Virus record (IMG/VR): IMGVR_UViG_3300032236_001613
Span: 186,001-250,000 of that record
Length of the DNA stretch: 64,000 nucleotides
Strand: one strand, 5' to 3'
Below the pieces are notes generated by a model, which searched no databases, had not been told where the DNA came from, and saw nothing but the letters and a program-made list of their open reading frames with translations. Positions 8,127-26,045 of this stretch are shown piece after piece; the stretch's first letter is position 1; every line of letters begins with the position of its first letter. The translations under genes and the position numbers were made by a program.

Positions 8127-8211
8127 GGGTAAGCGCCGGAGTGAGAGAGCCGGATTTGACTGTAAATCAAACGTCCCGACTGAGTAGGTGCGAATCCTAC
8201 CTTACCCACCA
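8127..8211 (+). tRNA. tRNA-Tyr(GTA)
   Basis: TTTGA-CTGTAAA-TCAAA, long variable arm, T-loop TGCGAAT, CCA. Confidence 0.9.
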
Positions 8212-8217
8212 AATAAT

Positions 8218-8321
8218 GCGGCAGTAAGTGCGTAATGGGCTAATGGTGGCCAATCCTGTCTACATGGATCAAATGTAACGGTTGCACCTTGATGTAGGTT
8301 CGAATCCTATCTGCTGCACCA
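8218..8321 (+). ncRNA. Atypical 104-nt tRNA-like gene, possible CTA anticodon
   Basis: Acceptor GCGGCAG/CTGCTGC-A-CCA and canonical T arm; irregular D and anticodon region. Confidence 0.6.
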
Positions 8322-8407
8322 CATTGCAACGGTTCTACCATCGTTAATCGGTAGCGCATACTTGGATGCGAGAAAAGACCTTTTACGTCGACCAAGACTA
8401 ATTTTAT

Positions 8408-8485
8408 GCTCCCATAGTTTAGAAGGGCCCAGAACATCCGATTCTCAGTCGGAAAACGCAGGTTCGAATCCTGCCGGGAGCGCCA
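8408..8485 (+). tRNA. tRNA-Glu(CTC)
   Basis: TCCGA-TTCTCAG-TCGGA, CCA. Confidence 0.9.
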
Positions 8486-8529
8486 TTTTACTTAATAAAT
8501 ATTACAAATTTTAAAATAAAGGGTTACTA

Positions 8530-9135
8530 ATGAATATCTCAGATTACAAACAATTTATAAAAGATACAGGCACTTTAATACAAATTGGTGCTTTTGATGG
8601 TGTTGCTTGCGAAGACTCAGGGTTTAGAGAATTAGTACTTTATAAAAATTATAATGCTCATTTGGTTGAACCAGTTATAGATTTTTTTCAGGCGTTACAA
8701 AAAAACTATAGTAATGCTACGAGTAATGTTCGATTTTATAATCAAGCAATTTATACAGAAAATGGAGAATTACCTTTTTTTAAAAATTACACTGACCCAT
8801 TACAATGTACTTTTATAAGAGAAAATGTAGCTGAATATCATGGGCAAACAATACTAGTACAGTCACGAACTTTTGATACTTTTTTACAAGAAAATAACAT
8901 TAATGAAATCGAAGGATTATTTATTGATGCAGAAGGTGCCGAAGATACTATACTCCAACAGCTTTTTGAAAAAACGAATATCAGACCTAATATAATTCGT
9001 TATGAATGGCCACATTTGCCTGACCCTGTAAACACAATCAGATACATTATGTCTTATGGCTATACTGTTTCTCCCTGCATCTATTCAGGCGGTCGTGTTG
9101 ATAACATTTGTATTAAAAACGACCTTTTAGTTTAA
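8530..9135 (+). CDS. FkbM-family methyltransferase
   Basis: IQIGAFDG, LVEP, LFIDAEGAE, IRYE. Confidence 0.8.
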   Translation: MNISDYKQFIKDTGTLIQIGAFDGVACEDSGFRELVLYKNYNAHLVEPVIDFFQALQKNYSNATSNVRFYNQAIYTENGELPFFKNYTDPLQCTFIRENVAEYHGQTILVQSRTFDTFLQENNINEIEGLFIDAEGAEDTILQQLFEKTNIRPNIIRYEWPHLPDPVNTIRYIMSYGYTVSPCIYSGGRVDNICIKNDLLV

Positions 9136-9139
9136 TCTC

Positions 9140-9214
9140 GGTTCCATAGTATATCGGTTAATACATCGGCTTGTCACGTCGAAGTGAGGGGTTCGATTCC
9201 CCTTGGAACCGCCA
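9140..9214 (+). tRNA. tRNA-Asp(GTC)
   Basis: TCGGC-TTGTCAC-GTCGA, G73, CCA. Confidence 0.92.
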
Positions 9215-9219
9215 AATAT

Positions 9220-9295
9220 GCCATCTTAGCTCAGTTGGTAGAGCAGCAGACTGAAAATCTGCGTGTCCCCGGTTCAATTCCGGGAGATGGTACCA
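9220..9295 (+). tRNA. tRNA-Phe(GAA)
   Basis: GCAGA-CTGAAAA-TCTGC, CCA. Confidence 0.95.
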
Positions 9296-9299
9296 GTTA

Positions 9300-10020
9300 T
9301 TATGCCCATCTCCCGTGATCAAAGCTATTGTCAGGGTTTTTAAATTTTCTTAAAGATGATTCTATTCCGGTTACCGGCCACGATATGTGATTTTTATATA
9401 AATGATATATCAACATGTTTTGTGGAGTAAAACACACTCCTTCGGTTGTATATTGATCAATATAATTAAAAACAGACGAATATATGGACATGACATCGCT
9501 ATTGCCTATAGCAAACTGATCGTTTATCCCTGCTCCTTGTCTTTCGGTATCTGGTGTTATTATCATTGGTGTGTTTATACGGTCAAGGTATTCTTTAACT
9601 TTATTTAAAAATATGTAATTATTTAAGCATAAATCTGGCCTTGCTCTAATCACTAAATCATATTTGCCAAACATAGCTTCGTATTTTTGTCTAATATGAC
9701 CAACACGTTGTACGCCATTAAACATATACCAAGCATGAGAGGCCCATGTATGAGTACTATGAGGTCCGCCTAAAATATATGGTTTAGTTTCATCAAATAT
9801 AGGTTCGGGTACAATATCAAAATGAACTACATAATTATTTTTTGGTAAATTATTAACCAATTTAACATAAAACTCATGTTTGTTATTATTCCAACTAGGA
9901 GGAACCCCTTTATCAATGGAATTGTTAGAATTCCAAACATGTATAAACCAATCTAATTGATCATAGATCAAAATCCTTAGTAAACCTCGGTCGACCTGAT
10001 AATTCAATTGCTACTTTCAT
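9300..10020 (-). pseudogene. Frameshifted putative glycosyltransferase-like gene
   Basis: ATG 10020 gives MKVAIELSGRPRFTKDFDL*; the body (YDLVIRARPDL, INDQFAIG) is in another frame. Confidence 0.6.
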
Positions 10021-10045
10021 GCGACTATTTATTGTTAGAGTTTAT

Positions 10046-10122
10046 GGGGCCATAACTCAATAGGCTAGAGTAACTGGCTTTTAACCAGTAAGTTGTGAGT
10101 TCGAGCCTCACTGGCCCTACCA
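10046..10122 (+). tRNA. tRNA-Lys(TTT)
   Basis: ACTGG-CTTTTAA-CCAGT, CCA. Confidence 0.93.
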
Positions 10123-10129
10123 TTTCAAT

Positions 10130-10206
10130 GCCTCCGTAACTCAATGGATCAGAGTGCTTGGCTTCGAACCAAGAAGTTGGGAGTTCGAATCTCTCCGGGG
10201 GCGCCA
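10130..10206 (+). tRNA. tRNA-Arg(TCG)
   Basis: CTTGG-CTTCGAA-CCAAG, CCA. Confidence 0.93.
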
Positions 10207-10261
10207 TATTACGTGATAAGTAAACAGCAGACAGTTTACAGAAACACAAAGGAGATTTTTA

Positions 10262-10843
10262 ATGAATAAGTTTATTGTTTCGATTATTGCCGGACTTGCT
10301 TTTGCGAATCTTGCAGTAGCCGCGGATTATGCTGGTGTTGATTATCAAGATAAGCAGAAGGTCGACGTTGCTGAACAACACGATGTATTTGGTGCTTATA
10401 TTGGACATAAGTTTTCTGACACAGGATTCTCTGTTGAAGGACGCTTAGAAAATGAAATTGTGCATGATCCTAGTAAGCATGAAGGGCTCGTTCAGGTAAA
10501 AGGAACTTATAATGTACCTGCAGCAATTCTAGAAGTTTATCCTTATGTCAGCGCCACAGTTGGCTATAAGAGCGAAGCAACTAGTAATTTTGATTTTTAT
10601 GTTTTAGAAACGGGATTAAAGTATACCCAACTACCTAACGTAGAACTACGTTATGGACTACGTCTACGTACTCCGTTTAACGAAAGTTCGGTAGGCGAAG
10701 GCAACCATTACCGTACAGTAGAAAATAGCATCAACGCCGTTTATAAACTAGACAGTCATAATGGCGTTACTTTAAAATATGCACGTGAGCATGGTGATAG
10801 CAATTATCACACTTACGGTGTTGGTCTAGTACACTCCTTCTAA
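10262..10843 (+). CDS. Outer-membrane beta-barrel (porin-like) protein
   Basis: Signal peptide ending AVA, alternating beta-strand pattern, C-terminal YGVGLVHSF. Confidence 0.7.
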   Translation: MNKFIVSIIAGLAFANLAVAADYAGVDYQDKQKVDVAEQHDVFGAYIGHKFSDTGFSVEGRLENEIVHDPSKHEGLVQVKGTYNVPAAILEVYPYVSATVGYKSEATSNFDFYVLETGLKYTQLPNVELRYGLRLRTPFNESSVGEGNHYRTVENSINAVYKLDSHNGVTLKYAREHGDSNYHTYGVGLVHSF

Positions 10844-10847
10844 TCAT

Positions 10848-11297
10848 ATGGCAATAATTGCAGCCTTATTATGTCTGCTAGGCTGGTTTTTGCCATTAAC
10901 AGATTATCTAACTCCTAAATCAGGAGTAGGTTATTGGATGGGTATAGTAGGAGCGTCCATGATGCTCCTACTTTTAACTTATAGTCTGCGAAAACGTTAT
11001 AAATTCTTAGATTGGTCACCCCCACTTAGTAAGTGGTTTAATGCACACATATTTTTAGGTCTATATGGGCCTTTATTAATCTTATATCATTGCGGCTATC
11101 ATTTAGGTGCTTTTAATAGTAATATGGCTTTATGGTCGATGATTATAGTTGCTATTAGCGGAGTTATAGGTAGATTTTTATATAATCGTCCTCAATTTAA
11201 AAAAGCATTCGCTATTTGGCATGTGGCACATTTGCCTTTTGTTTTTATGTTAGCTGCAGCAGCAGTTATACATATACTTGCAGTAAACATATATTAA
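10848..11297 (+). CDS. His-containing multi-pass membrane protein (possible heme b ligands)
   Basis: Hydrophobic helices with WFNAHIFLG, LYH, WHVAHLP, IH. Confidence 0.55.
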   Translation: MAIIAALLCLLGWFLPLTDYLTPKSGVGYWMGIVGASMMLLLLTYSLRKRYKFLDWSPPLSKWFNAHIFLGLYGPLLILYHCGYHLGAFNSNMALWSMIIVAISGVIGRFLYNRPQFKKAFAIWHVAHLPFVFMLAAAAVIHILAVNIY

Positions 11298-11305
11298 AAA
11301 CGTAT

Positions 11306-11381
11306 GGTGGCTATAGTGTAGAGGTTCGCACACTAGGTTGTGGCCCTGGTAGTAAGGGTTCAATTCCCTTTAGTCACCCCA
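11306..11381 (+). tRNA. tRNA-His(GTG)
   Basis: G-1:C73, CTAGG-TTGTGGC-CCTGG, CCA. Confidence 0.92.
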
Positions 11382-11447
11382 AATTATTTTTATAATTAGT
11401 CTAGGAATATAGATAATTTTCTCTTATAATTATCTATATAATTTTTC

Positions 11448-11537
11448 GGAAGTGTGGCAGAGTCCGGTTTATTGCAACAGTCTTGAAAACTGTCGAGTTT
11501 AATCGCTCCGTAGGTTCGAATCCTACTACTTCCGCCA
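11448..11537 (+). tRNA. tRNA-Ser(TGA)
   Basis: ACAGT-CTTGAAA-ACTGT, long variable arm, G73, CCA. Confidence 0.95.
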
Positions 11538-11541
11538 AATT

Positions 11542-11599
11542 TAGGATGCTTCCAGCAAATAAAAAACTTTTCTTGAAAAAAAGCCAAAACAGCATCCTG
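11542..11599 (+). ncRNA. Anticodon-display RNA copy 1 (TGA stem-loop)
   Basis: AGGATGCT/AGCATCCT closing stem, CAGCAA, internal CTTTT-CTTGAAA-AAAAG. Confidence 0.7.
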
Positions 11600-11609
11600 T
11601 TTAATTTTA

Positions 11610-11704
11610 CCTCGATAGCACAGGTGTGCGGCTAGGTCTTATAAACCTGGGAGAGTTGCCAGATTAGCGACAACGGGAAGGATCGTTACCTTCATCGAGG
11701 ACCA
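11610..11704 (+). tRNA. Non-canonical tRNA with TAT anticodon and long variable arm
   Basis: CCTCGAT/ATCGAGG-A-CCA; 6-bp stem CTAGGT-CTTATAA-ACCTGG; T-loop ATCGTTA. Confidence 0.75.
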
Positions 11705-11712
11705 AATTTTAG

Positions 11713-11741
11713 TTGACTAATTGGTAAATGCGTGTTAAAGT
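11713..11741 (+). promoter_or_regulatory. Sigma70-type promoter with extended -10
   Basis: TTGACT-N17-(TGt)TAAAGT. Confidence 0.6.
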
Positions 11742-11751
11742 ATACGCATAC

Positions 11752-11780
11752 GCTAAGAAATTAGCAACGCTCTTTAATAA
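11752..11780 (+). promoter_or_regulatory. rrn-type boxB/boxA antitermination site
   Basis: GCTAA-GAAA-TTAGC hairpin followed by CGCTCTTTAATAA. Confidence 0.7.
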
Positions 11781-11795
11781 ATGAAAATAGTTTAT

Positions 11796-11871
11796 GGTCC
11801 CATCATCTAGAGGCCTAGGATATTGCCCTTTCACGGCAAGTACACGGGTTCAAATCCCGTTGGGACTACCA
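11796..11871 (+). tRNA. tRNA-Glu(TTC)
   Basis: TTGCC-CTTTCAC-GGCAA, CCA. Confidence 0.93.
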
Positions 11872-11908
11872 TACTTTTTAACTAAATATCTAGCTACGGA
11901 GAAATACT

Positions 11909-12364
11909 ATGAGCTTTCTAGACGTTTTCAAGAAAGAAAAAGACAAGCTAGTTGAAGAAGTTACTAAAGTCGAATCTACTGTTGTCGAAGAAGTAAAGAA
12001 AGTAGAAGCAGTGGCTGAACGAGCTGTTGCTGCTACCGAAGCAGTAGTTAAAGAAGTTGTAGTAGATTTTGAAAAGATTTTAACAGAAGCCGAGCAGGCA
12101 GCAGAAAGAACTCTACGCGATGTAGAGTTAGCTCGCCAGTTATACGAAAAAGCACTGGCTAGAGCAAATCTAGCAGCTAATAGAGCTAGAGAAGCTGCTG
12201 AACAAGCAGCAGCAAAAGCCCAAGAAGAAGCTGAAAGAGCCTTGTTGAGAGCTGAACGTGCTGCTAAGTTAGTGATTGGTATTTCAGGATCGGCGCCAGC
12301 TCCGGTTATTGCGCCTCCACCAATCGCTCCTGCTCCACCCCCTACAAGTAATACTACTCAATAA
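11909..12364 (+). CDS. Ala/Glu-rich coiled-coil protein with Pro-rich tail
   Basis: Composition; GGAG SD. Confidence 0.6.
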   Translation: MSFLDVFKKEKDKLVEEVTKVESTVVEEVKKVEAVAERAVAATEAVVKEVVVDFEKILTEAEQAAERTLRDVELARQLYEKALARANLAANRAREAAEQAAAKAQEEAERALLRAERAAKLVIGISGSAPAPVIAPPPIAPAPPPTSNTTQ

Positions 12365-12366
12365 TT

Positions 12367-12442
12367 AGTAGTGTAGCATAGTGGCTAATGCAGCACCTTC
12401 ATACGGTGTTTACCATCGGTTCGAGTCCGATCACTACTACCA
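12367..12442 (+). tRNA. tRNA-CAT (elongator Met or Ile2)
   Basis: GCACC-TTCATAC-GGTGT, paired 1:72, CCA. Confidence 0.88.
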
Positions 12443-12446
12443 GTTT

Positions 12447-12561
12447 TAGGATACCTACAGCAACATAAATTACTCATGCTAAGAGAGAGGTCGTTGGTTC
12501 AAGTCCAACCTAGTCTTAGGACTAGTAGCTCAGTTGGTAGAGCACTAAAATGTGTATCCTG
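12447..12561 (+). ncRNA. Anticodon-display RNA copy 2 containing a circularly permuted tRNA (GCT loop)
   Basis: AGGATAC/GTATCCT closing stem; order is anticodon loop, variable loop, T arm, loop-closed acceptor stem, D arm. Confidence 0.8.
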
Positions 12562-12570
12562 TTTTATTCG

Positions 12571-12648
12571 GCACCGGTGGCAGAGTGGCCCAATGCAAGA
12601 GTCTGCAAAACTCTAAAGTCGTCAGTTCGAATCTGACCCGGTGCTCCA
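12571..12648 (+). tRNA. tRNA-Cys(GCA)
   Basis: AGAGT-CTGCAAA-ACTCT, U73, CCA. Confidence 0.93.
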
Positions 12649-12697
12649 ATATACTTGTATAATAGATAACAAACATATATAATATATGAAATTATAC

Positions 12698-12773
12698 GGC
12701 CTCGTAGCCTAGTGGATCAGGCAACAGCCTTCTAAGCTGTCTTACACAGGTTCGAATCCTGTCGAGGTCGCCA
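12698..12773 (+). tRNA. tRNA-Arg(TCT)
   Basis: ACAGC-CTTCTAA-GCTGT, CCA. Confidence 0.93.
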
Positions 12774-12824
12774 AATTAATTAGTTTGACATCTTAATAAA
12801 GATAAGTAATAATATATCAACAAC

Positions 12825-12898
12825 GCGGAATTGGCATATGGGTTGTGCTCCAGCCTTCCAAGCTGGCTAAACGAGTTCGAGTCTCGTATTCCGCTCCA
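12825..12898 (+). tRNA. tRNA-Gly(TCC)
   Basis: CCAGC-CTTCCAA-GCTGG, U73, CCA; TTGACA at 12785 upstream. Confidence 0.93.
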
Positions 12899-12915
12899 AC
12901 TTTTAAGAGGCTCTA

Positions 12916-13134
12916 ATGAATAATCTCGGTGAATTAAGAGATTACGCTGTTGCTCGAGGATATAAAATCAAAGAGTTTAACGGATATGCACTACATATTG
13001 GGCGTGATACTTATACTATGTTAGCTGGAGAAATTTATCTCAATAAGATTAAAACTCCTACTAAAGAAGTTTTAAAGAAATTTACAGAAAAGTCTGCTGC
13101 AAAAAAAACTGCAGCAACAGCAAAGAAAAAATAG
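12916..13134 (+). CDS. Hypothetical basic protein
   Basis: ORF with GAGG SD. Confidence 0.55.
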   Translation: MNNLGELRDYAVARGYKIKEFNGYALHIGRDTYTMLAGEIYLNKIKTPTKEVLKKFTEKSAAKKTAATAKKK

Positions 13135-13140
13135 TTTTGT

Positions 13141-13221
13141 GCCCTAATGGTGAAATTGGTAGACACGCAAGATTTAGGTTCTTGTCTTCGGGTGGGGGTT
13201 CGAGTCCCTCTTAGGGCACCA
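13141..13221 (+). tRNA. tRNA-Leu(TAG)
   Basis: CAAGA-TTTAGGT-TCTTG, short variable arm, A73, CCA. Confidence 0.92.
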
Positions 13222-13228
13222 ATAGTTT

Positions 13229-13289
13229 TAGGATGCCTACAGCAAATTTAAAAATCAAAATGTCAATTTGAAAACAAATGCGCATCCTG
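13229..13289 (+). ncRNA. Anticodon-display RNA copy 3 (GTC stem-loop)
   Basis: AGGATGC/GCATCCT closing stem, CTACAGCAA, internal TCAAA-ATGTCAA-TTTGA. Confidence 0.7.
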
Positions 13290-13298
13290 TTTAAATAT

Positions 13299-13372
13299 GC
13301 CGGTGTAGTATAATGATAGTGCGACGGTCTCCAAAACCGTTAGTGGGAGTTTGATTCTCTCCACCGGTGCCA
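13299..13372 (+). tRNA. tRNA-Trp(CCA)
   Basis: ACGGT-CTCCAAA-ACCGT, CCA. Confidence 0.92.
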
Positions 13373-13384
13373 AATCGAGGACTT

Positions 13385-13699
13385 ATGACAAAAAAATTTA
13401 CATTTAATGATTTACAACCTAGAGTTGAAATGCTAATCGATGCTCTAGAAAATCGTGGCGCTTGTGCTAGCGGCTTACCATATGCTCCGGGCGTTAAAGC
13501 AGTTGCTGAAAACTATAAGTCAATGTTAGATTTTATAAGAAATAAAACAATTAACAAAGACGATCTCATCAACAGTTTATCAACAGCTAAAGCACTTGTA
13601 TTAGAACGAGCAGGTGGTAATCAAATTGATAGAATACGTAAAATTCTAGATGCTCTTGACTCCTATATGATGAGAGAGTATAATAAACAGAACAGTTGA
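13385..13699 (+). CDS. Hypothetical protein
   Basis: GAGG SD before ATG 13385. Confidence 0.55.
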   Translation: MTKKFTFNDLQPRVEMLIDALENRGACASGLPYAPGVKAVAENYKSMLDFIRNKTINKDDLINSLSTAKALVLERAGGNQIDRIRKILDALDSYMMREYNKQNS

Positions 13700-13721
13700 C
13701 CCTTCGTCTAGCGGTAGGACA
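13697..13721 (+). pseudogene. 5' remnant of a tRNA-Gln-like gene
   Basis: TGACCCT-TC-GTCT-AGCGGT-AGGAC-A: acceptor 5' strand plus Gln-type D arm, no 3' half. Confidence 0.65.
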
Positions 13722-13735
13722 AATATAAATACTAT

Positions 13736-14278
13736 ATGCTTAGTAAAAATATTAGTTCAGAGACAATCGAAAAATTAATTGATTCAGGTTTAAAAACCTC
13801 AGAAATTGCATCTAAGCTCGGTATCTCTACTGCAACAGTTTCTTATTGGAAAAAGAAACTCGGAAAAGAACTTAGTAATATCAAACATGATTGGAAAAAA
13901 ATTCAAGAAGCCCACAACAATGGGTCTACTTATTCTCAATTATACAAAGAGTTTGGTGTTACTAAAAGATCATTACAGAAAGCTAGAGATCGAGGAGATT
14001 TCAAGGTTAGACAGCGTAAAAAATTGTCAAAAGATGACGCTAAAATTAGAAAAAGAATTATATGCAGAGAAGCGTGGATGCGGTATTATAGTAGAAAAAA
14101 ATATCAAACTCCGGCTGATGAAGATATTAAAAAATTACAAGAATTTTATGCTAATTGCCCGGTTGGTTATGAAGTAGATCACATCATACCTATAAGTAAA
14201 GGCGGATTACATACATTGTCGAATCTTCAATACTTAACTATTAAAGAGAATAGACAAAAAGGTAATAAGATATTATAA
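13736..14278 (+). CDS. HTH-HNH homing endonuclease
   Basis: N-terminal SEIASKLGISTATVSYW; YEVDHIIPISKGGLHTLSNLQYLTIKENRQK. Confidence 0.88.
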   Translation: MLSKNISSETIEKLIDSGLKTSEIASKLGISTATVSYWKKKLGKELSNIKHDWKKIQEAHNNGSTYSQLYKEFGVTKRSLQKARDRGDFKVRQRKKLSKDDAKIRKRIICREAWMRYYSRKKYQTPADEDIKKLQEFYANCPVGYEVDHIIPISKGGLHTLSNLQYLTIKENRQKGNKIL

Positions 14279-14289
14279 TTTAACACTAT

Positions 14290-14363
14290 TGGGGAATCTT
14301 CTAACGGCAGGAAGGCGGACTTTGACTCCGCTAATCTAGGTTCGAATCCTAGTTCCCCAGCCA
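14290..14363 (+). tRNA. tRNA-Gln(TTG)
   Basis: GCGGA-CTTTGAC-TCCGC, U1:A72, CCA. Confidence 0.93.
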
Positions 14364-14369
14364 ATTTTT

Positions 14370-14443
14370 GCCCGATTAGCTCAAAAGTAGAGCGCACGAC
14401 TGATAATCGTAAGACAAAGGAGCGTTACCTTTATTGGGCACCA
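14370..14443 (+). tRNA. tRNA-Ile(GAT) with atypical D and T loops
   Basis: CACGA-CTGATAA-TCGTA; T-loop AGCGTTA; CCA. Confidence 0.85.
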
Positions 14444-14459
14444 TATAAATAAAGACAAT

Positions 14460-14535
14460 TGGAGTGTAGCTCAGCGGCAGTAGCGTTCGCCTGTTAAGCG
14501 AATGGTCGTAGGTTCGATCCCTACCACTCCAGCCA
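14460..14535 (+). tRNA. tRNA-Asn(GTT)
   Basis: TTCGC-CTGTTAA-GCGAA, CCA. Confidence 0.92.
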
Positions 14536-14543
14536 AATTTTAG

Positions 14544-14572
14544 TTGACCATTTTCGAAATGTTCAATATAAT
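14544..14572 (+). promoter_or_regulatory. Sigma70-type promoter
   Basis: TTGACC-N17-TATAAT. Confidence 0.7.
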
Positions 14573-14601
14573 ATATTCAAGTTAGTAAATAGTTTCGCGT
14601 T

Positions 14602-14675
14602 GGGGGATTGATGTAGTGATAGCCTGGGACCCTTGCACGGTCTTCGCGAGAGTTTGATTCTCTCATCCTCCACCA
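14602..14675 (+). tRNA. tRNA-Ala(TGC)
   Basis: G3:U70, GGACC-CTTGCAC-GGTCT, CCA. Confidence 0.9.
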
Positions 14676-14683
14676 AAGTTTGA

Positions 14684-14757
14684 TGCAGGGTAGTAGAACG
14701 GAACTACGCTAGGCTCATAACCTAGAGAACTTGGTTCGACTCCAAGCTCTGCTTCCA
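14684..14757 (+). tRNA. tRNA-Met(CAT), initiator-like
   Basis: 1:72 mismatch, CTAGG-CTCATAA-CCTAG, CCA. Confidence 0.85.
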
Positions 14758-14766
14758 GTTTGAAAC

Positions 14767-14854
14767 GGATGGTTGCCTGAGCGGTTAAAGGAGCGGGTTG
14801 CTAACCCGTCGCGGTGAAAACTGCGCATAGGTTCGAATCCTATACCATCCGCCA
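14767..14854 (+). tRNA. tRNA-Ser(GCT)
   Basis: GCGGG-TTGCTAA-CCCGT, long variable arm, CCA. Confidence 0.94.
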
Positions 14855-14876
14855 ATTTGTTATATAGAGGAATAAA

Positions 14877-15092
14877 ATGCAAGAGTATAAGCCGACCGGT
14901 AGTTATCGTATGTCACGTCAAGCCAAGCAGATGTTATCTAGGATCCAGGATCCTATTGAGAGAACTGAAGCAAAACGTTTAATTATTCAAAGTGAGTTGC
15001 ATCTTCAGTTGACTCCTAAGCGTAATCCGCTTGATAAGGATCGCACAACTAAAAATAGTCGCAATAATAAAGACGACTCGTTAGAAGAGTAA
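14877..15092 (+). CDS. Hypothetical protein
   Basis: GAGGA SD. Confidence 0.55.
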   Translation: MQEYKPTGSYRMSRQAKQMLSRIQDPIERTEAKRLIIQSELHLQLTPKRNPLDKDRTTKNSRNNKDDSLEE

Positions 15093-15102
15093 ATAAAGTT
15101 AG

Positions 15103-15178
15103 GCCTTCTAAGCATTGCTGGCGATGCACCGGATTTGTAACCCGGGGATAGTCTGTTCGATTCAGACAGAAGGCACCA
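15103..15178 (+). tRNA. tRNA-Thr(TGT)
   Basis: GCCTTCT/AGAAGGC acceptor, loop TTTGTAA, CCA. Confidence 0.85.
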
Positions 15179-15182
15179 GTTT

Positions 15183-15286
15183 AGACGGACCTGTAACCAT
15201 ATTCCGTCTCCGCCGGAGCGAAAACAGGATGGGCTGCTGCCGCGGGGTTTGACTGTTTCCTGACACACAAATAACAGTCATGTGTT
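15183..15286 (+). ncRNA. Pseudoknotted structured RNA between tRNAs
   Basis: AGACGGA/TCCGTCT with CCTGT/ACAGG; GACTGTT/AACAGTC with ACACA/TGTGT. Confidence 0.6.
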
Positions 15287-15289
15287 TAT

Positions 15290-15364
15290 GCCCGGTTAGC
15301 TCAGGGGTAGAGCGTCTGGTTTACATCCAGAATGTCGGCGGTTCGAAACCGTCACCGGGTACCA
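15290..15364 (+). tRNA. tRNA-Val(TAC)
   Basis: TCTGG-TTTACAT-CCAGA, CCA. Confidence 0.94.
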
Positions 15365-15378
15365 GTTTAGTAAGGTCA

Positions 15379-15454
15379 CGGGGTGTAGCTCAGTCTGGTT
15401 TAGAGCGTCCGCTTTGGGAGCGGAAGGTCCAAAGTTCGAATCTTTGTACCCCGA
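15379..15454 (+). tRNA. tRNA-Pro(TGG), no encoded CCA
   Basis: TCCGC-TTTGGGA-GCGGA, C1:G72, followed by AAAA. Confidence 0.9.
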
Positions 15455-15469
15455 AAAATTAAATTTACA

Positions 15470-15901
15470 ATGAAAATAAAAATTACAGATCAAGATCCTG
15501 ACCGTCATAATCACATAGAATATCCTATGGAGATTGGAGGTCAGGCTTTTGCACCTGTAAAAATCGAAAAAGAAAAAGATCTTATGCTAGCTGTCGCACA
15601 ACTTAGCGCACAGCAAGAATATGATCGCATCATGGAATCTGTTTCTATATTACAACGGCAAGCACAAGCACTACAAAGAAGAATGCATTTAACAGAGATG
15701 GTACATGCTGCTAAGTTTAGTTTTGTGCCAATTCCGGGTAAAAGTTATTGGTTAGTCGAAGATACTAAAAAATCTCAAATTATTTTAACCCCAATGGGTC
15801 CATCAGATTGGAGTTGTTTGGCGCCTGAAGAATATAAGTATGTTGCATATGTACGTTGTTTAGGCGATCAAACCTGGCAAGAAATTATAGAGCCCGATTA
15901 G
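15470..15901 (+). CDS. Conserved hypothetical protein (DUF2452-like)
   Basis: YPMEIG..AFAP, AKFSFVPIPGKSYWL, MGPSDW, DQTW. Confidence 0.6.
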   Translation: MKIKITDQDPDRHNHIEYPMEIGGQAFAPVKIEKEKDLMLAVAQLSAQQEYDRIMESVSILQRQAQALQRRMHLTEMVHAAKFSFVPIPGKSYWLVEDTKKSQIILTPMGPSDWSCLAPEEYKYVAYVRCLGDQTWQEIIEPD

Positions 15902-15968
15902 CTCAGTTGGTAGTAGCAACTGATTAGTAATCAGTAGGTCGGCGGTTCGAATCCGTCATCGGGCACCA
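15892..15968 (+). tRNA. tRNA-Thr(AGT)
   Basis: ACTGA-TTAGTAA-TCAGT, CCA; overlaps the upstream CDS end. Confidence 0.9.
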
Positions 15969-16004
15969 TATAAGAAAGATATATACATTTAAGGAGACCA
16001 TATA

Positions 16005-16250
16005 ATGAGTAAAGGAAGTAGAACTAGACCATTGTCGGTCACTAGAAAAACGTTCGATAGTAATTGGGATCGAATTTTTGGAAAAAAGGAATATGATATG
16101 CAAATTAAAGTAAAAGAAGGATCCTTAGGCAGTTGTCCTTGCGGACGCAGTCCGATTAATCGCTGTGTTGGATGGCACAATCTCAACGAAGAGCAGTTAG
16201 CCAAAGCAAAGGCCGATTATGCAGCTAAAGAAGCAAAGAAAACTGCATGA
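16005..16250 (+). CDS. CDGSH-like iron-sulfur domain protein
   Basis: CPCGRSPINRCVGWH. Confidence 0.65.
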   Translation: MSKGSRTRPLSVTRKTFDSNWDRIFGKKEYDMQIKVKEGSLGSCPCGRSPINRCVGWHNLNEEQLAKAKADYAAKEAKKTA

Positions 16251-16651
16251 TAGAAAAAGTTGTAGTTAACGGCACGTTTGATATACTGCACTTAGGGCAT
16301 ATTAGACTTTTAGAATATGCTCGTGAGCTTGGATGGTATTTACTTGTCTTAATTGATTCAGATCGTAGAGTACAAGAACTTAAAGGCCCTACACGGCCGG
16401 TTAACAATCAAGAAGAAAGAGCCGAAATGCTTCGTGCTATTAAGTATGTTGACGAAGTGCAAATTTTTGACAGTGATGATGAATTAAGAAACCTTATTAA
16501 AGAATATCAGCCGGATTTTATGGTTAAAGGTAGTGATTACAGAAATCGTCCTATTATAGGTAGCGAATATTGTAAGGAAATTAAGTTTTATGAGTATATG
16601 GAAGGCTATTCGACCACAAAAAAAATATCAAGTATTATTGATAGGCGATAG
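16247..16651 (+). CDS. ADP-heptose synthase adenylyltransferase domain (RfaE/HldE domain II)
   Basis: NGTFDILHLGH, LKGPTRP, VKGSDY, YSTT. Confidence 0.9.
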   Translation: MIEKVVVNGTFDILHLGHIRLLEYARELGWYLLVLIDSDRRVQELKGPTRPVNNQEERAEMLRAIKYVDEVQIFDSDDELRNLIKEYQPDFMVKGSDYRNRPIIGSEYCKEIKFYEYMEGYSTTKKISSIIDRR

Positions 16652-17384
16652 TTGTACTGACGTTTATCAATACGGAACTGTGGATAGAATTAGTCCAGAA
16701 GCACCTGTACCTATTTTTAAACATAGTCATACAGAAACTAGGCCAGGAATGGCAGCAAACGTACAGTTGAATCTTGAATCGTTTGGAATCGAAGTTACAG
16801 CATTGCTAGGGCCTGGATCAGTAAAGACTAGGCTAGTTGATCTTCGTAGTCGGCAACATGTTCTTAGAATCGATGATGATGCTAACGCCACTCCTATGTT
16901 ATTCGATTCTAAACTTGATCTAACACACTATCATGCGGTAGTGTTTAGTGATTACAATAAAGGATGGGTTAGTTACGAATTAGTTGAAGTAGTACGACAA
17001 AAGTTCGGTGGACCAATTTTTATTGATACTAAAAAACAAGATCTAGCAAAATTTTGGGACTGTTATGTTAAAGTTAACGAAACTGAGTACAATAACAGAT
17101 GGTCTATCAATAATAAATTAATTGTTACATTAGGTAATCGAGGTGCAGTTTATAAAGAACTTGGTCGCAAAGAAGTAGAATTTCCACCAGACACAGTCGA
17201 GGTAGTAGATGTATGTGGTGCTGGAGACACATTTTTAGCAGCCATAGTTGCAGAATACTTAAATAGTAGAGATATTAATAGTGCAATAAAGTTTGCTAAC
17301 CATGCTAGTGCTATAAGTGTACAGCATAGCGGAGTTTATGCATTAACTCGAGAAGATATTAAGAAGATTAAAAAGCGGGTATGA
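16590..17384 (+). CDS. Heptose-7-phosphate kinase domain (RfaE/HldE domain I, PfkB family)
   Basis: RISPEAPVP, SDYNKG, DVCGAGDTF. Confidence 0.9.
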   Translation: MSIWKAIRPQKKYQVLLIGDSCTDVYQYGTVDRISPEAPVPIFKHSHTETRPGMAANVQLNLESFGIEVTALLGPGSVKTRLVDLRSRQHVLRIDDDANATPMLFDSKLDLTHYHAVVFSDYNKGWVSYELVEVVRQKFGGPIFIDTKKQDLAKFWDCYVKVNETEYNNRWSINNKLIVTLGNRGAVYKELGRKEVEFPPDTVEVVDVCGAGDTFLAAIVAEYLNSRDINSAIKFANHASAISVQHSGVYALTREDIKKIKKRV

Positions 17385-17397
17385 TGTAATCGAACCT
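17375..17397 (+). pseudogene. 5' remnant of a tRNA-Gly-like gene
   Basis: GCGGGTA-TG-ATGT-AATCG-AACCT with no 3' half. Confidence 0.5.
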
Positions 17398-17431
17398 TTG
17401 ACTTATATAAATAAGTATATAGGAGTACGAT

Positions 17432-17914
17432 ATGAAATATTGCCCGAAGTGTAATAATGAACATAATAAACCTGGAATGTTTTGCTCAAGATCATGTGCA
17501 AATAGTCGTGTTTGGTCAGAAGAGACCAATTTAAAAAGATCAATAACATCAAAGGGTAATTCCCCGTGGAATAAAGGTATATCCACCGGAATTAACGAAG
17601 AAAGAAATAAAGTTATACGATTAGTTCGATTGGAAAAAAATAGAAATAAATTTTTAAACGGGTTGATAACCGAAAGATCGGCAATAAGGAAACATCTTAC
17701 AAGAGAACATGGTTATTTCTGTTCTATTTGTTCTATTTCAGAATGGCAAGGACAAAAAATTACATTACAAGTAGATCATATAGATGGAAACGCAGGAAAC
17801 AATTTACCTACAAATCTAAGATTAATTTGTCCGAATTGTCATAGTCAAACTAAAACATTTGGAGCAAGAAATAAAGGTTCAGGAAGAGCATCTAGAGGTC
17901 TTCCGTTAAGTTAA
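17432..17914 (+). CDS. HNH homing endonuclease with N-terminal zinc finger
   Basis: CPKC..FCSRSC, PWNKG, LQVDHIDGNAGNNLPTNLRLICPNCH. Confidence 0.9.
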   Translation: MKYCPKCNNEHNKPGMFCSRSCANSRVWSEETNLKRSITSKGNSPWNKGISTGINEERNKVIRLVRLEKNRNKFLNGLITERSAIRKHLTREHGYFCSICSISEWQGQKITLQVDHIDGNAGNNLPTNLRLICPNCHSQTKTFGARNKGSGRASRGLPLS

Positions 17915-17924
17915 ATAATATATC

Positions 17925-17999
17925 GCGGGATTAATTCAGTGGTAGAATGCAACTTTGCCAAAGTTGATGTCACCGGTTCGAGCCCGGTATCCCGCTCCA
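17925..17999 (+). tRNA. tRNA-Gly(GCC)
   Basis: CAACT-TTGCCAA-AGTTG, U73, CCA. Confidence 0.94.
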
Positions 18000-18649: not shown

Positions 18650-19192
18650 ATGAAAACTTGGATCACTAGCGACCTTCATTTTGGGCACGAACGTATAAAG
18701 ATATTCTGCCCAAAAACTCGTGAACGCTTTACAGATGTGAAGCATATGAACGAAGCTATGATTTTAGAATGGAATGCTTTAGTGCAACCAGAAGATCTAG
18801 TCTACATATTAGGTGATTTTGCATTTACATCCACCCAAGATGCAGTTAAAATTCTTAAAAGGCTTAACGGAGATAAAATCCTTATTGAAGGAAATCATGA
18901 TCGTAAGCATCTAAAAGATACAAACTTTAGAAATTCTTTTAAAGAAATACACAAATATCTTGATATTGTGTATAATAAGACTAAAGTAGTAATGTTTCAT
19001 TATCCCATTGCAGAATGGGATCAAATGTTTAGAGGTAGTGTACATTTTTATGGGCATCTACACGGAAACTCTTCTGGGCTCGAACAATTTCGAGCTAGAG
19101 ATGTTGGCATGGATGCAACTGGTAATATTGTTACATTACTTGATCATGCTATTGCTGACGCACTAAAAGGTCAGCCTAAAAGCTCTCGCTAA
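18650..19192 (+). CDS. Calcineurin-like metallophosphoesterase
   Basis: SDLHFGH, LGD, GNHD, HYP, GHLH. Confidence 0.9.
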   Translation: MKTWITSDLHFGHERIKIFCPKTRERFTDVKHMNEAMILEWNALVQPEDLVYILGDFAFTSTQDAVKILKRLNGDKILIEGNHDRKHLKDTNFRNSFKEIHKYLDIVYNKTKVVMFHYPIAEWDQMFRGSVHFYGHLHGNSSGLEQFRARDVGMDATGNIVTLLDHAIADALKGQPKSSR

Positions 19193-25039: not shown

Positions 25040-25446
25040 AAGTAGGACTTAGCTATAGTCGTTGTATACTTGATATTGTCGAAGGACGAGTAAGCGAAGA
25101 CGATGTATTAGTTATTATTACTCGTACTAACTTCGATCCAACTAATGACAATGAATGGAATGAAATTTGGGGACATTATGTATTTTCAGAGTGGCACCAG
25201 TATGATTACTCCGACAAAGAGCATAACGAGTTATTTAGAAATGTAACTTTAAGTTTGCACAAGAATGGAAAATTGCACCAACCAAGAAAATTCGGCGTAC
25301 ATCCGCATCGAAGATCGGAATATTGGTTGGAGACTGTACTTGTTTCTACAGATTTAGAAAAAAATGAGGCAGCTAAAAAGGCGTGGAATAACTTTAAAGT
25401 GATAGCAGGGTTAACTAACATAAATTTAGATAAGGAATATAATTAA
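25036..25446 (+). CDS. Hypothetical protein
   Basis: Coupled [14 protein letters not shown]...GKLHQPR. Confidence 0.6.
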
Positions 25447-26045
25447 TGATTACTAATAATTTGGTACCGATTGTAATTGAAAAAACAGGATCAGGCGAAC
25501 GAGCGTTTGATATCTATAGTCGTTTGCTTAACGAACGTATTGTTTTTTTAAATGGGCCAGTGCACGACCATAGTGCTAACTTAATTGTTGCACAAATGCT
25601 TCATCTCGAAAGTGTTGATTGCGATAAAGACATTAGTTTTTATATTAATAGTCCTGGTGGAGTAGTAACTGCAGGTATGAGCATTTATGATGTCATGCAG
25701 TTTATTAAGCCCGATGTAGCTACATACGTTATGGGACAAGCATGTAGTATGGGCAGTTTGTTAGCTCAAGCCGGGTCACCTGGAAAGCGATTTATGCTGC
25801 CATACGCAAGGCATATGATCCATCAGCCAAGCGGCGGCGCTAGTGGGCAAGCAACTGACATGCAAATTCAAGTTGAAGAAATCCTTAAGATGAAGAAAGA
25901 ACTTACCGGAATTTACGTTAAACACAATAGTAAGGGTAAAACTTATGAGCAACTTGTTTCTGATATGGAACGAGATAAGTTTATGAGCGCACAAGAAGCA
26001 CTTGATTACGGACTTATTGATCAAATTATTGAAAAGCGTAGTTAA
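25446..26045 (+). CDS. clpP: ATP-dependent Clp protease proteolytic subunit
   Basis: [34 protein letters not shown]. Confidence 0.97.

What the first reader, a model, noticed from the sequence alone, without database searches (positions are those of the whole stretch)
11542..13289. Repeated ncRNA scaffold that displays interchangeable anticodon stem-loops
Seen: three dispersed copies (11542-11599, 12447-12561, 13229-13289), each just after a tRNA CCA end. They share TAGGATRC-Y(1-2)WCAGCAA...GYATCCTGTTT, and the closing stem covaries (GGATGC/GCATCC versus GGATAC/GTATCC). Between A-rich linkers each carries a stem with a 7-nt loop that has U33 and A37-A38 like an anticodon loop: CTTTT-CT[TGA]AA-AAAAG (same loop as the neighbouring tRNA-Ser), CTC-AT[GCT]AA-GAG and TCAAA-AT[GTC]AA-TTTGA. 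All three anticodons match full tRNAs in this array. Inference: a protein-binding scaffold that presents anticodon loops as decoys or inhibitors for host anticodon nucleases (PrrC, RloC, VapC, PARIS-type), or as sensors or donors for tRNA repair. I do not recognise it as a named family.
Basis: partly seen in the sequence, partly recalled or inferred. Interest (0 to 1): 0.95.

Follow-up and report, generated by a model that had tools for sequence, protein, structure and literature searches.

The report
Phage Ro-partner RNAs displaying anticodon loops
The three repeats are real members of a very widespread, apparently undescribed family of small phage RNAs: a conserved terminal clamp holds an anticodon-like hairpin or a whole rearranged tRNA look-alike, and in other phages their genes sit next to the gene of a Ro60-like ring protein that one study found to counter a bacterial defence.

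Summary
Three copies (11543-11601, 12448-12563, 13230-13291, + strand) sit between tRNA genes. All share a 7-bp terminal stem, then NNN-CAGCAA on the 5' side and UGU after the 3' strand. Copies 1 and 3 carry one anticodon-like hairpin.

The family is large: 227 distinct members in 111 viral loci, with a freely covarying stem. It also occurs in cultured phages of E. coli, Listeria, Mycobacterium, Ralstonia, Bacillus, Enterococcus, Staphylococcus, Campylobacter and Sinorhizobium. Hairpins show a tRNA-like signature (5-bp stem, 7-nt loop, C32 U33 A37 A38), and different triplets appear on identical stems.

The family is tightly linked to a DUF2828+vWA protein gene. In 65 of 74 protein-seeded loci an RNA ends 11-150 nt (mostly 12-29) before that gene. 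Its predicted fold matches Ro60/TROVE structures. In phage Bas63 this protein (gp130) counters the Ppl defence.

Best reading: Y-RNA-like partners of a phage Ro60-like protein that present tRNA or anticodon mimics. The partner gene was not found in the window or in the roughly 18 kb flanking it. No binding or function was tested. The clamp also resembles Dictyostelium Class I RNAs.

The parts
11543..11601 (+). Copy 1, short clamp RNA (59 nt). Clamp 11543-11549 pairs with 11592-11598. CAGCAA lies at 11553-11558. The anticodon-like hairpin has stem 11567-11571 / 11579-11583 and loop CUUGAAA at 11572-11578. The 3' GUU is at 11599-11601.
   Evidence: Sequence; repeat families D12/D13; model R1 at 63.8 bits, E 2e-12; Rfam Dicty_Class_I 30.3 bits, below the gathering score of 41.5. 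The loop equals that of tRNA-Ser(UGA). Copies with the same clamp and an NGA loop end 27-28 nt upstream of the Ro-like gene in L006, L063 and L103.
12448..12563 (+). Copy 2, long clamp RNA (116 nt). Clamp 12448-12454 pairs with 12554-12560. CAGCAA lies at 12458-12463. Weak anticodon-like hairpin at 12473-12485 (loop AUGCUAA). Variable region AGGUC at 12488-12492. T arm 12493-12509. Acceptor-like hairpin capped by UUAG at 12510-12525. D arm 12528-12543.
   Evidence: Rfam YrlA RF02553 at 44.1 bits (gathering score 69), E 5e-8. In an alignment of 23 relatives, RNAalifold recovers the clamp, T arm, acceptor hairpin and D arm; 14 of 23 pairs show compensatory changes. ARAGORN and the Rfam tRNA model do not call it.
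13230..13291 (+). Copy 3, short clamp RNA (62 nt). Clamp 13230-13236 pairs with 13282-13288. CAGCAA lies at 13240-13245. The anticodon-like hairpin has stem 13255-13259 / 13267-13271 and loop AUGUCAA at 13260-13266.
   Evidence: Sequence; R1 at 58.1 bits; Rfam Dicty_Class_I 27.5 bits. The hairpin is present in the MFE fold.
8127..17999 (+). The tRNA array (26 tRNA genes, CCA encoded) in which the three RNAs are embedded. They are probably co-transcribed with the tRNAs and released by tRNA processing.
   Evidence: ARAGORN and Rfam. No promoter or terminator lies next to the copies. Family-wide, 81 of 108 members have a same-strand tRNA within 100 nt.
18650..19192 (+). Metallophosphoesterase gene. 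It is a recurrent neighbour of the Ro-like gene in other phages and is the only member of that gene neighbourhood present in the window.
   Evidence: Pfam Metallophos. Second commonest protein cluster in the RNA-seeded loci, 26 loci. Homologues at 63-69% identity sit 1-2 kb from the Ro-like gene.

Best explanation
The three elements are small stable RNAs of a widespread phage family that I call clamp RNAs. They work like Y RNAs.

Proposed mechanism:
1. Each is transcribed within the tRNA array and cut out by the enzymes that mature the flanking tRNAs (inferred).
2. Its two ends pair into a 7-bp clamp. The clamp is followed by single-stranded NNN-CAGCAA on the 5' side and UGU on the 3' side.
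3. This module is proposed to be the binding site of a phage-encoded Ro60-like ring protein (DUF2828 helical domain plus vWA/MIDAS domain). This step is inferred from tight gene linkage and the Ro60 fold.
4. The variable insert is a tRNA-derived module. It is either an anticodon stem-loop alone (copies 1 and 3) or a complete circularly permuted tRNA body with a capped acceptor stem and no CCA (copy 2).
5. The insert presents a particular anticodon loop or tRNA shape but cannot be charged.
6. By analogy with Y RNAs, the RNA would tether or gate the Ro-like protein towards a tRNA-recognising partner, in a counter-defence or RNA-damage setting.

Which partner is engaged, and whether the RNA acts as tether, gate or decoy, is not known.
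For: Family and structure:
- A generic search (any 6-bp stem + 3 nt + CAGCAA ... complementary strand + UG) gives 306 hits in 1.05 Mb of viral loci, against 9 in reversed sequence.
- Stem positions 5-6 covary freely: GC 16, CG 14, AU 11, UA 4.
- The long form has covariation-supported T, acceptor and D arms. It gives YrlA sub-threshold hits in three phage lineages.

Anticodon signature:
- Of 134 short members, 66 fold with a 7-nt loop. Among those, C32 is 71%, U33 91%, A37 92%, A38 79%, and the stem is 5 bp in 80%.
- 138 of 227 members carry such a hairpin, against 29 in shuffled cargo.
- Identical stems carry different triplets.

Linkage to the protein:
- The commonest protein in RNA-seeded loci is DUF2828+DUF7788.
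- In 30 of 34 of its genes, a clamp RNA lies within 400 nt upstream on the same strand.
- Independent protein-seeded tests agree. Nine of 10 cultured phages from several host phyla have clamp RNAs within 2 kb on the same strand.
- In 80 IMG/VR loci there are 175 same-strand elements, 10 on the opposite strand and 12 in the reversed-sequence control. In 65 of 74 loci an RNA ends 11-150 nt (mostly 12-29) before the start codon.

Ro60 fold:
- The AlphaFold2 model has pLDDT 81 and pTM 0.75. Its top four full-length Foldseek matches are all Ro60/TROVE: 9kop (E 3e-9, TM 0.56), D. radiodurans Rsr 2nvo, and human Ro60 9nep and 9nf8.
- The MIDAS motif DxSGS is invariant.

Literature:
- The Bas63 homologue gp130 (bas63_0130) counters the Ppl defence and was noted to be Ro60-like (PMC11482910). 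Four unannotated clamp RNAs lie 340-1170 nt downstream of it.
- The Listeria phage CKA15 homologue CKA15_055 is found in virions and lies downstream of very highly transcribed non-coding regions (PMC12282133).
- In that phage, its three clamp RNAs follow a TTGACA-17-TATCAT promoter.
Against: - No Ro-like gene occurs in this window, in about 8 kb beyond its start or in 10 kb beyond its end. The partner in this particular 330-kb phage is therefore unverified.
- No binding, expression or processing data exist for these RNAs.
- The clamp lacks the Ro-binding motifs known from Y RNAs (GGUCCGA; GNCGAAN0-1G).
- Single-sequence folding z-scores are weak.
- The linkage test in IMG/VR used related phages, so the 80 loci are not independent.
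- My selection of family members required perfect stems. The 99% pairing is therefore partly circular; the reversed-sequence and genome controls carry the weight.
- A/U-rich composition favours A-rich loops.
Confidence: 0.6

Rival explanations
1. Free-standing decoys. The RNAs act without a dedicated protein, as competitive substrates or inhibitors of host anticodon nucleases or other anticodon-directed enzymes. The clamp only stabilises the ends.
For: - The anticodon-arm signature is real, and triplets are interchangeable on fixed stems.
- Displayed triplets include UUU, GUA, GUU and UCU. By my own knowledge, these are anticodons of tRNAs targeted by known anticodon nucleases.
- The window has RNAs but no Ro-like gene nearby.
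- End-healing-type genes (metallophosphoesterase, P-loop kinase, DSP phosphatase) recur in these arrays.
Against: - An invariant single-stranded CAGCAA and UGU are not needed for mere end protection.
- Many cargos are not anticodon-like: 4-6-nt loops, T-arm-only inserts, 150-nt domains and 12-nt linkers.
- The near-obligate position just upstream of the Ro-like gene is unexplained.
- No nuclease has been tested.
Confidence: 0.15
2. Processing punctuation or decaying tRNA remnants. The elements are degenerate tRNA pieces or spacer structures that merely help RNase P/E cut the polycistronic tRNA transcript, and have no function of their own.
For: - They are embedded in tRNA arrays at fixed short distances from flanking tRNAs.
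- The cargo is tRNA-derived. Some members enclose sequences that the Rfam tRNA model scores above threshold, for example the tRNA hit at L047:4447-4517 at 63 bits.
Against: - The clamp is conserved from Firmicute to proteobacterial and actinobacterial phages while its stem covaries.
- Tandem copies occur with their own promoter and no tRNA between them (Listeria, Staphylococcus and Enterococcus phages).
- The linkage to one protein family is unexplained.
Confidence: 0.08
3. A cis-acting leader. The clamp is an operator in the 5' UTR through which the Ro-like protein controls its own translation, and the dispersed copies are by-products.
For: - An RNA ends mostly 12-29 nt before the start codon in most loci.
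- Minimal clamps overlap the ribosome-binding site or start codon in Vibrio phage K571 and lie 15 nt before it in phiM7.
Against: - Most copies are not next to the gene: up to 4.6 kb away in RSP15, downstream of the gene in Bas63, Alf5, the Staphylococcus phage and the mycobacteriophage, and with no gene within reach in this window.
- The elaborate, conserved tRNA-like cargos are not explained.
Confidence: 0.07
4. A small mobile repeat (MITE-like, or associated with homing endonucleases) that spreads within tRNA arrays.
For: - There are several copies per genome.
- HNH and GIY-YIG endonuclease genes are common in the same arrays.
Against: - The paired ends covary rather than being identical between copies.
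- There are no target-site duplications.
- Copies with the same clamp and the same cargo recur across different phages.
- The strand bias relative to the Ro-like gene is 175 to 10.
Confidence: 0.03

Closest known systems
Bacterial and phage Y RNAs, especially YrlA (Rfam RF02553; Chen et al. 2014, PMC4201824)
   Same: - Two-module design: a terminal stem formed by the 5' and 3' ends, plus a variable effector module.
- The long form has a tRNA-like domain in the same permuted order (T arm, capped acceptor hairpin, D arm).
- The genes lie on the same strand within a few kb of a Ro60-fold protein gene.
- Several RNAs occur per genome, some with and some without the tRNA-like domain (like YrlA and YrlB).
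   Different: - The partner is a DUF2828/DUF7788 protein, not a Pfam TROVE protein.
- The protein-side motif is NNN-CAGCAA plus 3' UGU, not GNCGAAN0-1G.
- The clamp joins the tRNA-like body between the D arm and a separate anticodon-like hairpin, rather than continuing the anticodon stem.
- Scores stay below the Rfam threshold (44 versus 69 bits).
- Short forms display an anticodon arm, which is not a known feature of YrlB.
Dictyostelium Class I RNAs (Rfam RF01414; Kjellin et al. 2021, PMC7919456)
   Same: - Length is about 60 nt.
- The 5' end starts with G, preceded by A.
- There is a 6-bp terminal stem that covaries.
- The stem is immediately followed by (C)UUA-CAGCAA.
- The middle is variable and A/U-rich, occasionally more than 100 nt.
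- The 3' strand is followed by UG(U).
   Different: - The linker is one nucleotide longer in Dictyostelium (4 versus 3 nt); phage phiM7 has a 4-nt example.
- Dictyostelium genes have their own DUSE promoter in a eukaryotic nucleus.
- The known binder is an RRM protein (Rnp1A/CIBP).
- The Dictyostelium sequences I read show no evident anticodon-like hairpin.
- Phage copies score 27-30 bits against a threshold of 41.5.
- Homology versus convergence is unresolved.
Phage T4 species 1 and 2 RNAs (rnaC, rnaD)
   Same: They are small stable RNAs of unknown function, encoded inside a phage tRNA cluster and processed from the tRNA transcript. rnaC ends in a T-arm-like hairpin.
   Different: They have no terminal clamp, no CAGCAA and no UGU layout. 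I did not check whether T4 has a Ro-like gene.
Circularly permuted tRNA genes (red alga Cyanidioschyzon merolae; my own knowledge)
   Same: In copy 2 the 3' part of the tRNA comes before the 5' part, and the two acceptor strands are joined by a short loop.
   Different: In the alga, the permuted precursors are circularised and reopened to give normal, chargeable tRNAs. Here there is no CCA, the acceptor stem is capped by a 4-nt loop, and the break lies between the D arm and the anticodon arm, held by the clamp. Nothing suggests maturation into a working tRNA.

Membership tests
YrlA / Y RNA-like (RF02553) | Score at or above the Rfam gathering threshold (69 bits) | tested here: not met
   Copy 2 scores 44.1 bits, E 5e-8. 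Copies 1 and 3 give no hit.
YrlA / Y RNA-like (RF02553) | tRNA-like domain with T arm, capped acceptor-like hairpin and D arm | tested here: met
   Met for copy 2 only. Supported by covariation in 23 relatives. Copies 1 and 3 lack it.
YrlA / Y RNA-like (RF02553) | GNCGAAN0-1G motif near the 5' end (the proposed Rsr contact) | tested here: not met
   The 5' strand reads AGGAUNN-NNN-CAGCAA; no GNCGAA is present.
YrlA / Y RNA-like (RF02553) | Encoded within about 4 kb of a Ro60 (TROVE) gene on the same strand | tested here: inconclusive
   Not met in this window or its flanks. Family-wide, the RNAs are linked to a Ro60-fold DUF2828 protein, not to a Pfam TROVE protein.
Dictyostelium Class I RNA (RF01414) | Score at or above the Rfam gathering threshold (41.5 bits) | tested here: not met
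   Copies 1 and 3 score 30.3 and 27.5 bits. No match of any family other than tRNA reached 41.5 bits in the six further loci scanned; the lowest score listed was 40.8.
Dictyostelium Class I RNA (RF01414) | 6-bp terminal stem starting with G, adjacent 11-nt CCUUACAGCAA motif, CUGU at the 3' end, about 60 nt long | tested here: met
   Stem, CAGCAA, CUGU and length match. The motif is one nucleotide shorter: C-CUACAGCAA or C-UUCCAGCAA.
Dictyostelium Class I RNA (RF01414) | Dictyostelid nuclear gene with a DUSE promoter about 60 nt upstream | tested here: not met
   The window is a tailed-phage genome (tail fibres, family B polymerase, HNH endonucleases). The copies follow tRNAs directly.
Canonical tRNA | Cloverleaf with a free acceptor end (CCA is encoded in this phage), detected by tRNA finders | tested here: not met
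   ARAGORN and the Rfam tRNA model do not call any of the three. In copy 2 the acceptor stem is closed by a UUAG loop.
Intrinsic terminator | Compact G+C-rich hairpin followed by a U tract | tested here: not met
   No terminator-like site is predicted at the copies. The stem encloses 40-100 nt.
Clamp RNA family (defined here) | A-G-started 6-7-bp terminal stem, 3-4 nt, then CAGCAA, variable insert, complementary strand, then UG | tested here: met
   All three copies fit. Model R1 scores 63.8 and 58.1 bits for copies 1 and 3. Copy 2 aligns with 22 long-form relatives.

The most novel reading that the evidence does not exclude
Clamp RNAs plus the Ro60-like protein form a programmable counter-defence particle. 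The clamp docks on the ring protein. The exchangeable anticodon loop or tRNA body decides which tRNA-directed host enzyme is captured or blocked, for example an anticodon nuclease or another defence effector. The same clamp in Dictyostelium Class I RNAs would then mean that this RNA-protein pairing is ancient, or was transferred between phages or bacteria and social amoebae. That would give the long-unexplained Class I RNAs a testable partner, a DUF2828/vWA protein.
Probability: 0.2. Interest if true: 0.92.

Novelty: new variant of a known kind. Interest (0 to 1): 0.8.

Why it matters
Phage tRNA arrays hold many unannotated gaps. This work shows that a large share of those gaps, in hundreds of cultured phages and thousands of metagenomic ones, encode one RNA family with a defined anatomy and a defined candidate protein partner.

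- It gives concrete RNA candidates to two recent papers that only guessed at 'Y RNAs' next to a Ro-like gene: Bas63 gp130, a Ppl counter-defence, and Listeria phage CKA15_055, a virion protein.
- It extends the Ro60/Y RNA principle to a second, much more abundant protein family.
- It shows that the RNAs carry anticodon-arm or whole-tRNA mimics with exchangeable triplets. That points to tRNA-centred conflicts.
- Bas63 grows on E. coli K-12, so the hypothesis is directly testable.
- The unexpected match to Dictyostelium Class I RNAs suggests a partner to look for in an open eukaryotic question.

Tried and rejected
- blastn of the region against cultured phages found only tRNA matches.
- Rfam at gathering threshold found only tRNAs.
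- An Rfam E-value scan of six tRNA-dense loci was swamped by tRNA hits. It showed only that nothing reaches the Class I threshold.
- T4 rnaC and rnaD were checked and lack the clamp.
- HMMER searches of the partner protein against PDB sequences gave only a marginal vWA match, E 0.18. NCBIfam gave nothing.
- The large protein search returned only close relatives and gave no insight into TROVE or eukaryotic relatives.
- I looked for the Ro-like gene in the window's own genome by several routes: tblastn and a profile HMM on six-frame translations of the window and flanks, two contig look-ups, and a relatives scan. All were negative or uninformative. About 250 kb of the 330-kb contig remains unseen.
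- Pfam on 43 window ORFs and three ORFs beyond the window end found no TROVE, RtcB, RNA ligase or Pnkp.
- A search for a DUF2828 protein in the partial Dictyostelium proteome held with the Class I paper found nothing usable. Literature searches for DUF2828 were uninformative.
- I considered and dropped the idea that the clamp is a small ORF start (AGGAUG), because most stems lack AUG.
- The most highly expressed non-coding region of Listeria phage CKA15 is not a clamp RNA. It is a ROOL RNA.
Full report
**1. The observation**

The window carries a + strand array of 26 tRNA genes with encoded CCA, between 8127 and 17999. Three intergenic elements sit in it at 11543-11601, 12448-12563 and 13230-13291. 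They share a 5' end of the form UUUAGGAURC-YUM-CAGCAA and a 3' end GYAUCCUGUUU. The repeat finder reports these as the 3-copy families D13 and D12.

Each copy begins 5 nt after the CCA of a tRNA, and the next tRNA begins 8-9 nt after it. No promoter-like or terminator-like site lies next to them. They are most simply read as parts of the tRNA transcript.

- Copy 1 has the same 7-nt loop as the adjacent tRNA-Ser(UGA).
- Copy 2 matches tRNA-Ser(GCU) at 6 of 7 positions.
- Copy 3 matches tRNA-Asp(GUC) at 5 of 7 positions.

Thermodynamic support from single sequences is weak, with z-scores of -1.3 to -1.6. The copy 1 hairpin is not in the MFE fold. The case therefore has to rest on comparison with relatives.

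**2.

Between the clamp strands, copy 2 holds these parts in order:
- a weak anticodon-like hairpin;
- a typical variable region, AGGUC;
- a T arm with a GGUUCAAGUCC loop region;
- an acceptor-like stem closed by UUAG;
- UA, followed by a D arm that is identical over 19 nt to that of the phage's tRNA-Phe (family D16).

This is a circularly permuted tRNA body without a free acceptor end. Rfam's only non-tRNA hit in the region is YrlA (Y RNA-like), at 44.1 bits against a threshold of 69, E 5e-8.

In an alignment of 23 relatives with the same layout, RNAalifold recovers the clamp (7 bp), T arm (5 bp), acceptor hairpin (7 bp) and D arm (4 bp). Fourteen of the 23 pairs show compensatory changes.

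**3. The family is real and large**

- The 17-nt 5' pattern matches 111 stretches of IMG/VR viral contigs. In 105 of 117 matches the exact complementary strand follows within 200 nt, nearly always with UG after it.
- The same pattern in 596 Gb of bacterial and archaeal genomes gives the number of hits expected by chance. Only about 2 of the 120 fetched have the 3' partner in the family layout. This serves as a negative control.
- I then relaxed the search to any 6-bp stem, 3 nt, CAGCAA, the complementary strand and UG. The viral loci give 306 hits against 9 in reversed sequence. The stems include GGAUGC, GGAUAC, GGUUAG, GGAUAG, GGAUCC, GGAUCG and many others.
- On a 46-sequence alignment, the two inner stem pairs show all four Watson-Crick types: GC 16, CG 14, AU 11, UA 4. 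Because I selected perfect stems, the controls above are the real evidence, not the percentage paired.
- These loci are extremely tRNA-dense: 1384 tRNAs in 1.05 Mb. Of 108 members, 81 have a same-strand tRNA within 100 nt.
- A covariance model built from other phages' short members finds copies 1 and 3 at 63.8 and 58.1 bits. Nothing else in the window scores above 19 bits.

**4. Cargo**

The insert is very diverse. It includes:
- single hairpins;
- a T arm only;
- D arm, anticodon arm and T arm in normal order;
- full tRNA-like sequences that the Rfam tRNA model scores above threshold;
- the permuted body of copy 2;
- structured domains of about 150 nt;
- in phiM7, only 12 nt.

The anticodon idea holds up for a large share of members.
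- Of 134 short members, 66 fold with a 7-nt loop. Among those, C32 is 71%, U33 91%, A37 92% and A38 79%, and the stem is 5 bp in 80%.
- 138 of 227 members have a 5-bp/7-nt hairpin with U33 and R37, against 29 in shuffled cargo. About 22 of the 138 are T loops.
- Identical stems carry different triplets. Differences concentrate at positions 34 and 35 (47 each), then 36 (30).
- Within the copy 1 type (same clamp, stem CUUUU/AAAAG), loops are mostly N-U-(U/G/C)-G-A-A-A. These are the Ser NGA anticodons with only the wobble base changing.
- Displayed triplets match a tRNA of the same locus somewhat more often than chance: 59 of 138 against 42 +/- 5.

**5. The partner**

Clustering all ORFs of the RNA-seeded loci gives one dominant protein. 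It is about 465 aa, present in 34 loci, and matches Pfam DUF2828 plus DUF7788. It has an invariant MIDAS motif.

- In 30 of 34 cases a clamp RNA lies within 400 nt upstream on the same strand, usually 13-28 nt.
- That test is biased by how the loci were found, so I repeated it starting from the protein. Homologues occur in 710 cultured phage records, where some are annotated 'Ro-like RNA binding protein'.
- In 9 of 10 such phages, clamp RNAs lie within 2 kb on the same strand. The hosts were E. coli, Sinorhizobium, Mycobacterium, Listeria, Campylobacter, Bacillus, Enterococcus, Vibrio and Staphylococcus; Fusobacterium was negative by the strict rule.
- In 80 IMG/VR loci fetched by the protein there are 175 same-strand elements, 10 on the opposite strand and 12 in the reversed control. 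In 65 of 74 loci an RNA ends 11-150 nt (mostly 12-29) before the start codon.
- Ralstonia phage RSP15 has the gene and six clamp RNAs spread over 7 kb of its tRNA array.

An AlphaFold2 model of the protein (pLDDT 81, pTM 0.75) has as its four best, full-length Foldseek matches a phage TROVE protein (9kop, E 3e-9, TM 0.56), D. radiodurans Rsr and human Ro60. All other matches cover only the vWA domain. Sequence methods alone see only the vWA part.

Chen et al. 2014 searched only genomes with annotated TROVE proteins and defined a different motif. This RNA family was therefore outside their survey.

**6. Functional hints from the literature**

- In Bas63 (JohannRWettstein), gp130 is reported to be Ro60-like and to counter the Ppl defence. 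Its authors guessed that some neighbouring 'tRNA genes' might be Y RNAs.
- gp130 is bas63_0130, a member of this protein family. Four unannotated clamp RNAs lie 340-1170 nt downstream of it.
- In Listeria phage CKA15 the homologue CKA15_055 is present in virions. It lies downstream of highly transcribed non-coding regions that the authors tentatively called Y RNAs.
- The three clamp RNAs of that phage lie at 25278-25564, directly after a consensus promoter. The paper's strongest region is instead a ROOL RNA.
- End-healing-type genes (metallophosphoesterase, P-loop kinase, DSP phosphatase) recur in the arrays. The window has the metallophosphoesterase at 18650-19192.

**7. Interpretation**

The best-supported reading is a Y-RNA-like system. 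The clamp with CAGCAA and UGU is the protein-binding module for the Ro60-like protein. The insert is a non-chargeable tRNA or anticodon-arm mimic. The setting is counter-defence or RNA damage.

What is shown:
- the anatomy;
- conservation and covariation;
- gene linkage;
- the predicted fold of the partner protein.

What is inferred:
- release by tRNA processing;
- binding to the Ro-like protein;
- the role of the mimic.

The main weakness for this window is that the Ro-like gene is absent from the 64 kb, from about 8 kb before it and from 10 kb after it. About 250 kb of the 330-kb contig was not seen. However, copies with the same clamp and an NGA loop as copy 1 are the gene-proximal RNA in L006, L063 and L103.

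**8. The Dictyostelium resemblance**

Copies 1 and 3 hit Rfam's Dictyostelium Class I RNA model at 30.3 and 27.5 bits, against a threshold of 41.5.

The published features of that class are:
- a 5' G preceded by A;
- a covarying 6-bp terminal stem;
- an adjacent CCUUACAGCAA motif;
- a variable middle;
- a CUGU end;
- a length of about 60 nt.

The published sequences fit my operational definition of the phage family with a 4-nt rather than 3-nt linker. A 4-nt linker also occurs in phiM7.

By the background rate of that definition (about 12 per megabase of strand), such a match to some Rfam family is unlikely but not impossible by chance. I treat it as an open lead, not as membership. DUF2828 proteins are mentioned in plant and tardigrade papers. 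Whether dictyostelids have one could not be tested here.

**9. Verdict**

The elements belong to a widespread RNA family that neither Rfam nor the paper library I searched describes. It is best classed as a new variant of the Y RNA/Ro60 kind, and a tractable E. coli K-12 model is available for direct tests.

Noticed in passing
window 11610-11704; 14370-14440; 8127-8208: Three unusual tRNA-like genes. The first is a 95-nt 'tRNA-Ile(UAU)' with a long extra arm and an odd T loop (AUCGUUA). The second is seen only by Rfam and has a similar T loop (AGCGUUA; repeat family D11). The third is also seen only by Rfam (42 bits).
   Followed up: no
window about 13700-13730: An orphan piece that looks like the 5' part of a tRNA (acceptor strand plus D arm) lies just before the HNH endonuclease ORF at 13736-14278. 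It may be a tRNA gene disrupted by the endonuclease insertion.
   Followed up: no
window 18650-19192: A metallophosphoesterase whose homologues sit 1-2 kb from the Ro-like gene in many other phages. Here the Ro-like gene is missing from that syntenic neighbourhood.
   Followed up: partly
L238:1468-2019 (Listeria phage P100); cka15 record about 26236-26727: A ROOL RNA (Rfam RF03087, 86 bits against a gathering score of 99.1, E 5.5e-16) lies between tRNAs. It is about 650 nt upstream of the three clamp RNAs and about 980 nt upstream of the Ro-like gene. It probably corresponds to the most highly transcribed 'non-coding ORFs' CKA15_059-061 reported for phage CKA15.
   Followed up: partly
L242:2467-2507 (Vibrio phage K571); L236:2451-2485 (Sinorhizobium phage phiM7): Minimal clamps with almost no cargo. 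The K571 one overlaps the ribosome-binding site and start codon of the Ro-like gene; the phiM7 one ends 15 nt before the start codon. This hints at autoregulation.
   Followed up: no
L235:4824-5147 (Alf5), L408:4891-5043 (Bas63), L244:4019-4366 (Staphylococcus phage S-CoN_Ph8): In cultured-phage records, small 'hypothetical protein' CDSs are annotated over clamp RNAs, some on the opposite strand. These are probably mis-annotations.
   Followed up: partly
L241:1690-2400 (Enterococcus phage EfV12-phi1): Four tandem clamp RNAs, one of them with CAGCGA instead of CAGCAA. Each is preceded by a further conserved hairpin of about 30 nt whose stem covaries (GUUCC/GGAAC, GCUUC/GAAGC, GCUCU/AGAGC). The transcription unit may therefore be larger in Firmicute phages.
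   Followed up: no
L237:3962-4209 (Mycobacterium phage CicholasNage): Three tandem clamp RNAs lie directly downstream of the 'Ro-like RNA binding protein' gene. They have AG instead of UG after the 3' strand. The middle one is a YrlA sub-threshold hit (39.8 bits).
   Followed up: partly
window 25446-26045, 53294-54142, 54171-56444: The phage encodes its own ClpP, DnaJ and ClpB-like chaperone/protease set.
   Followed up: no
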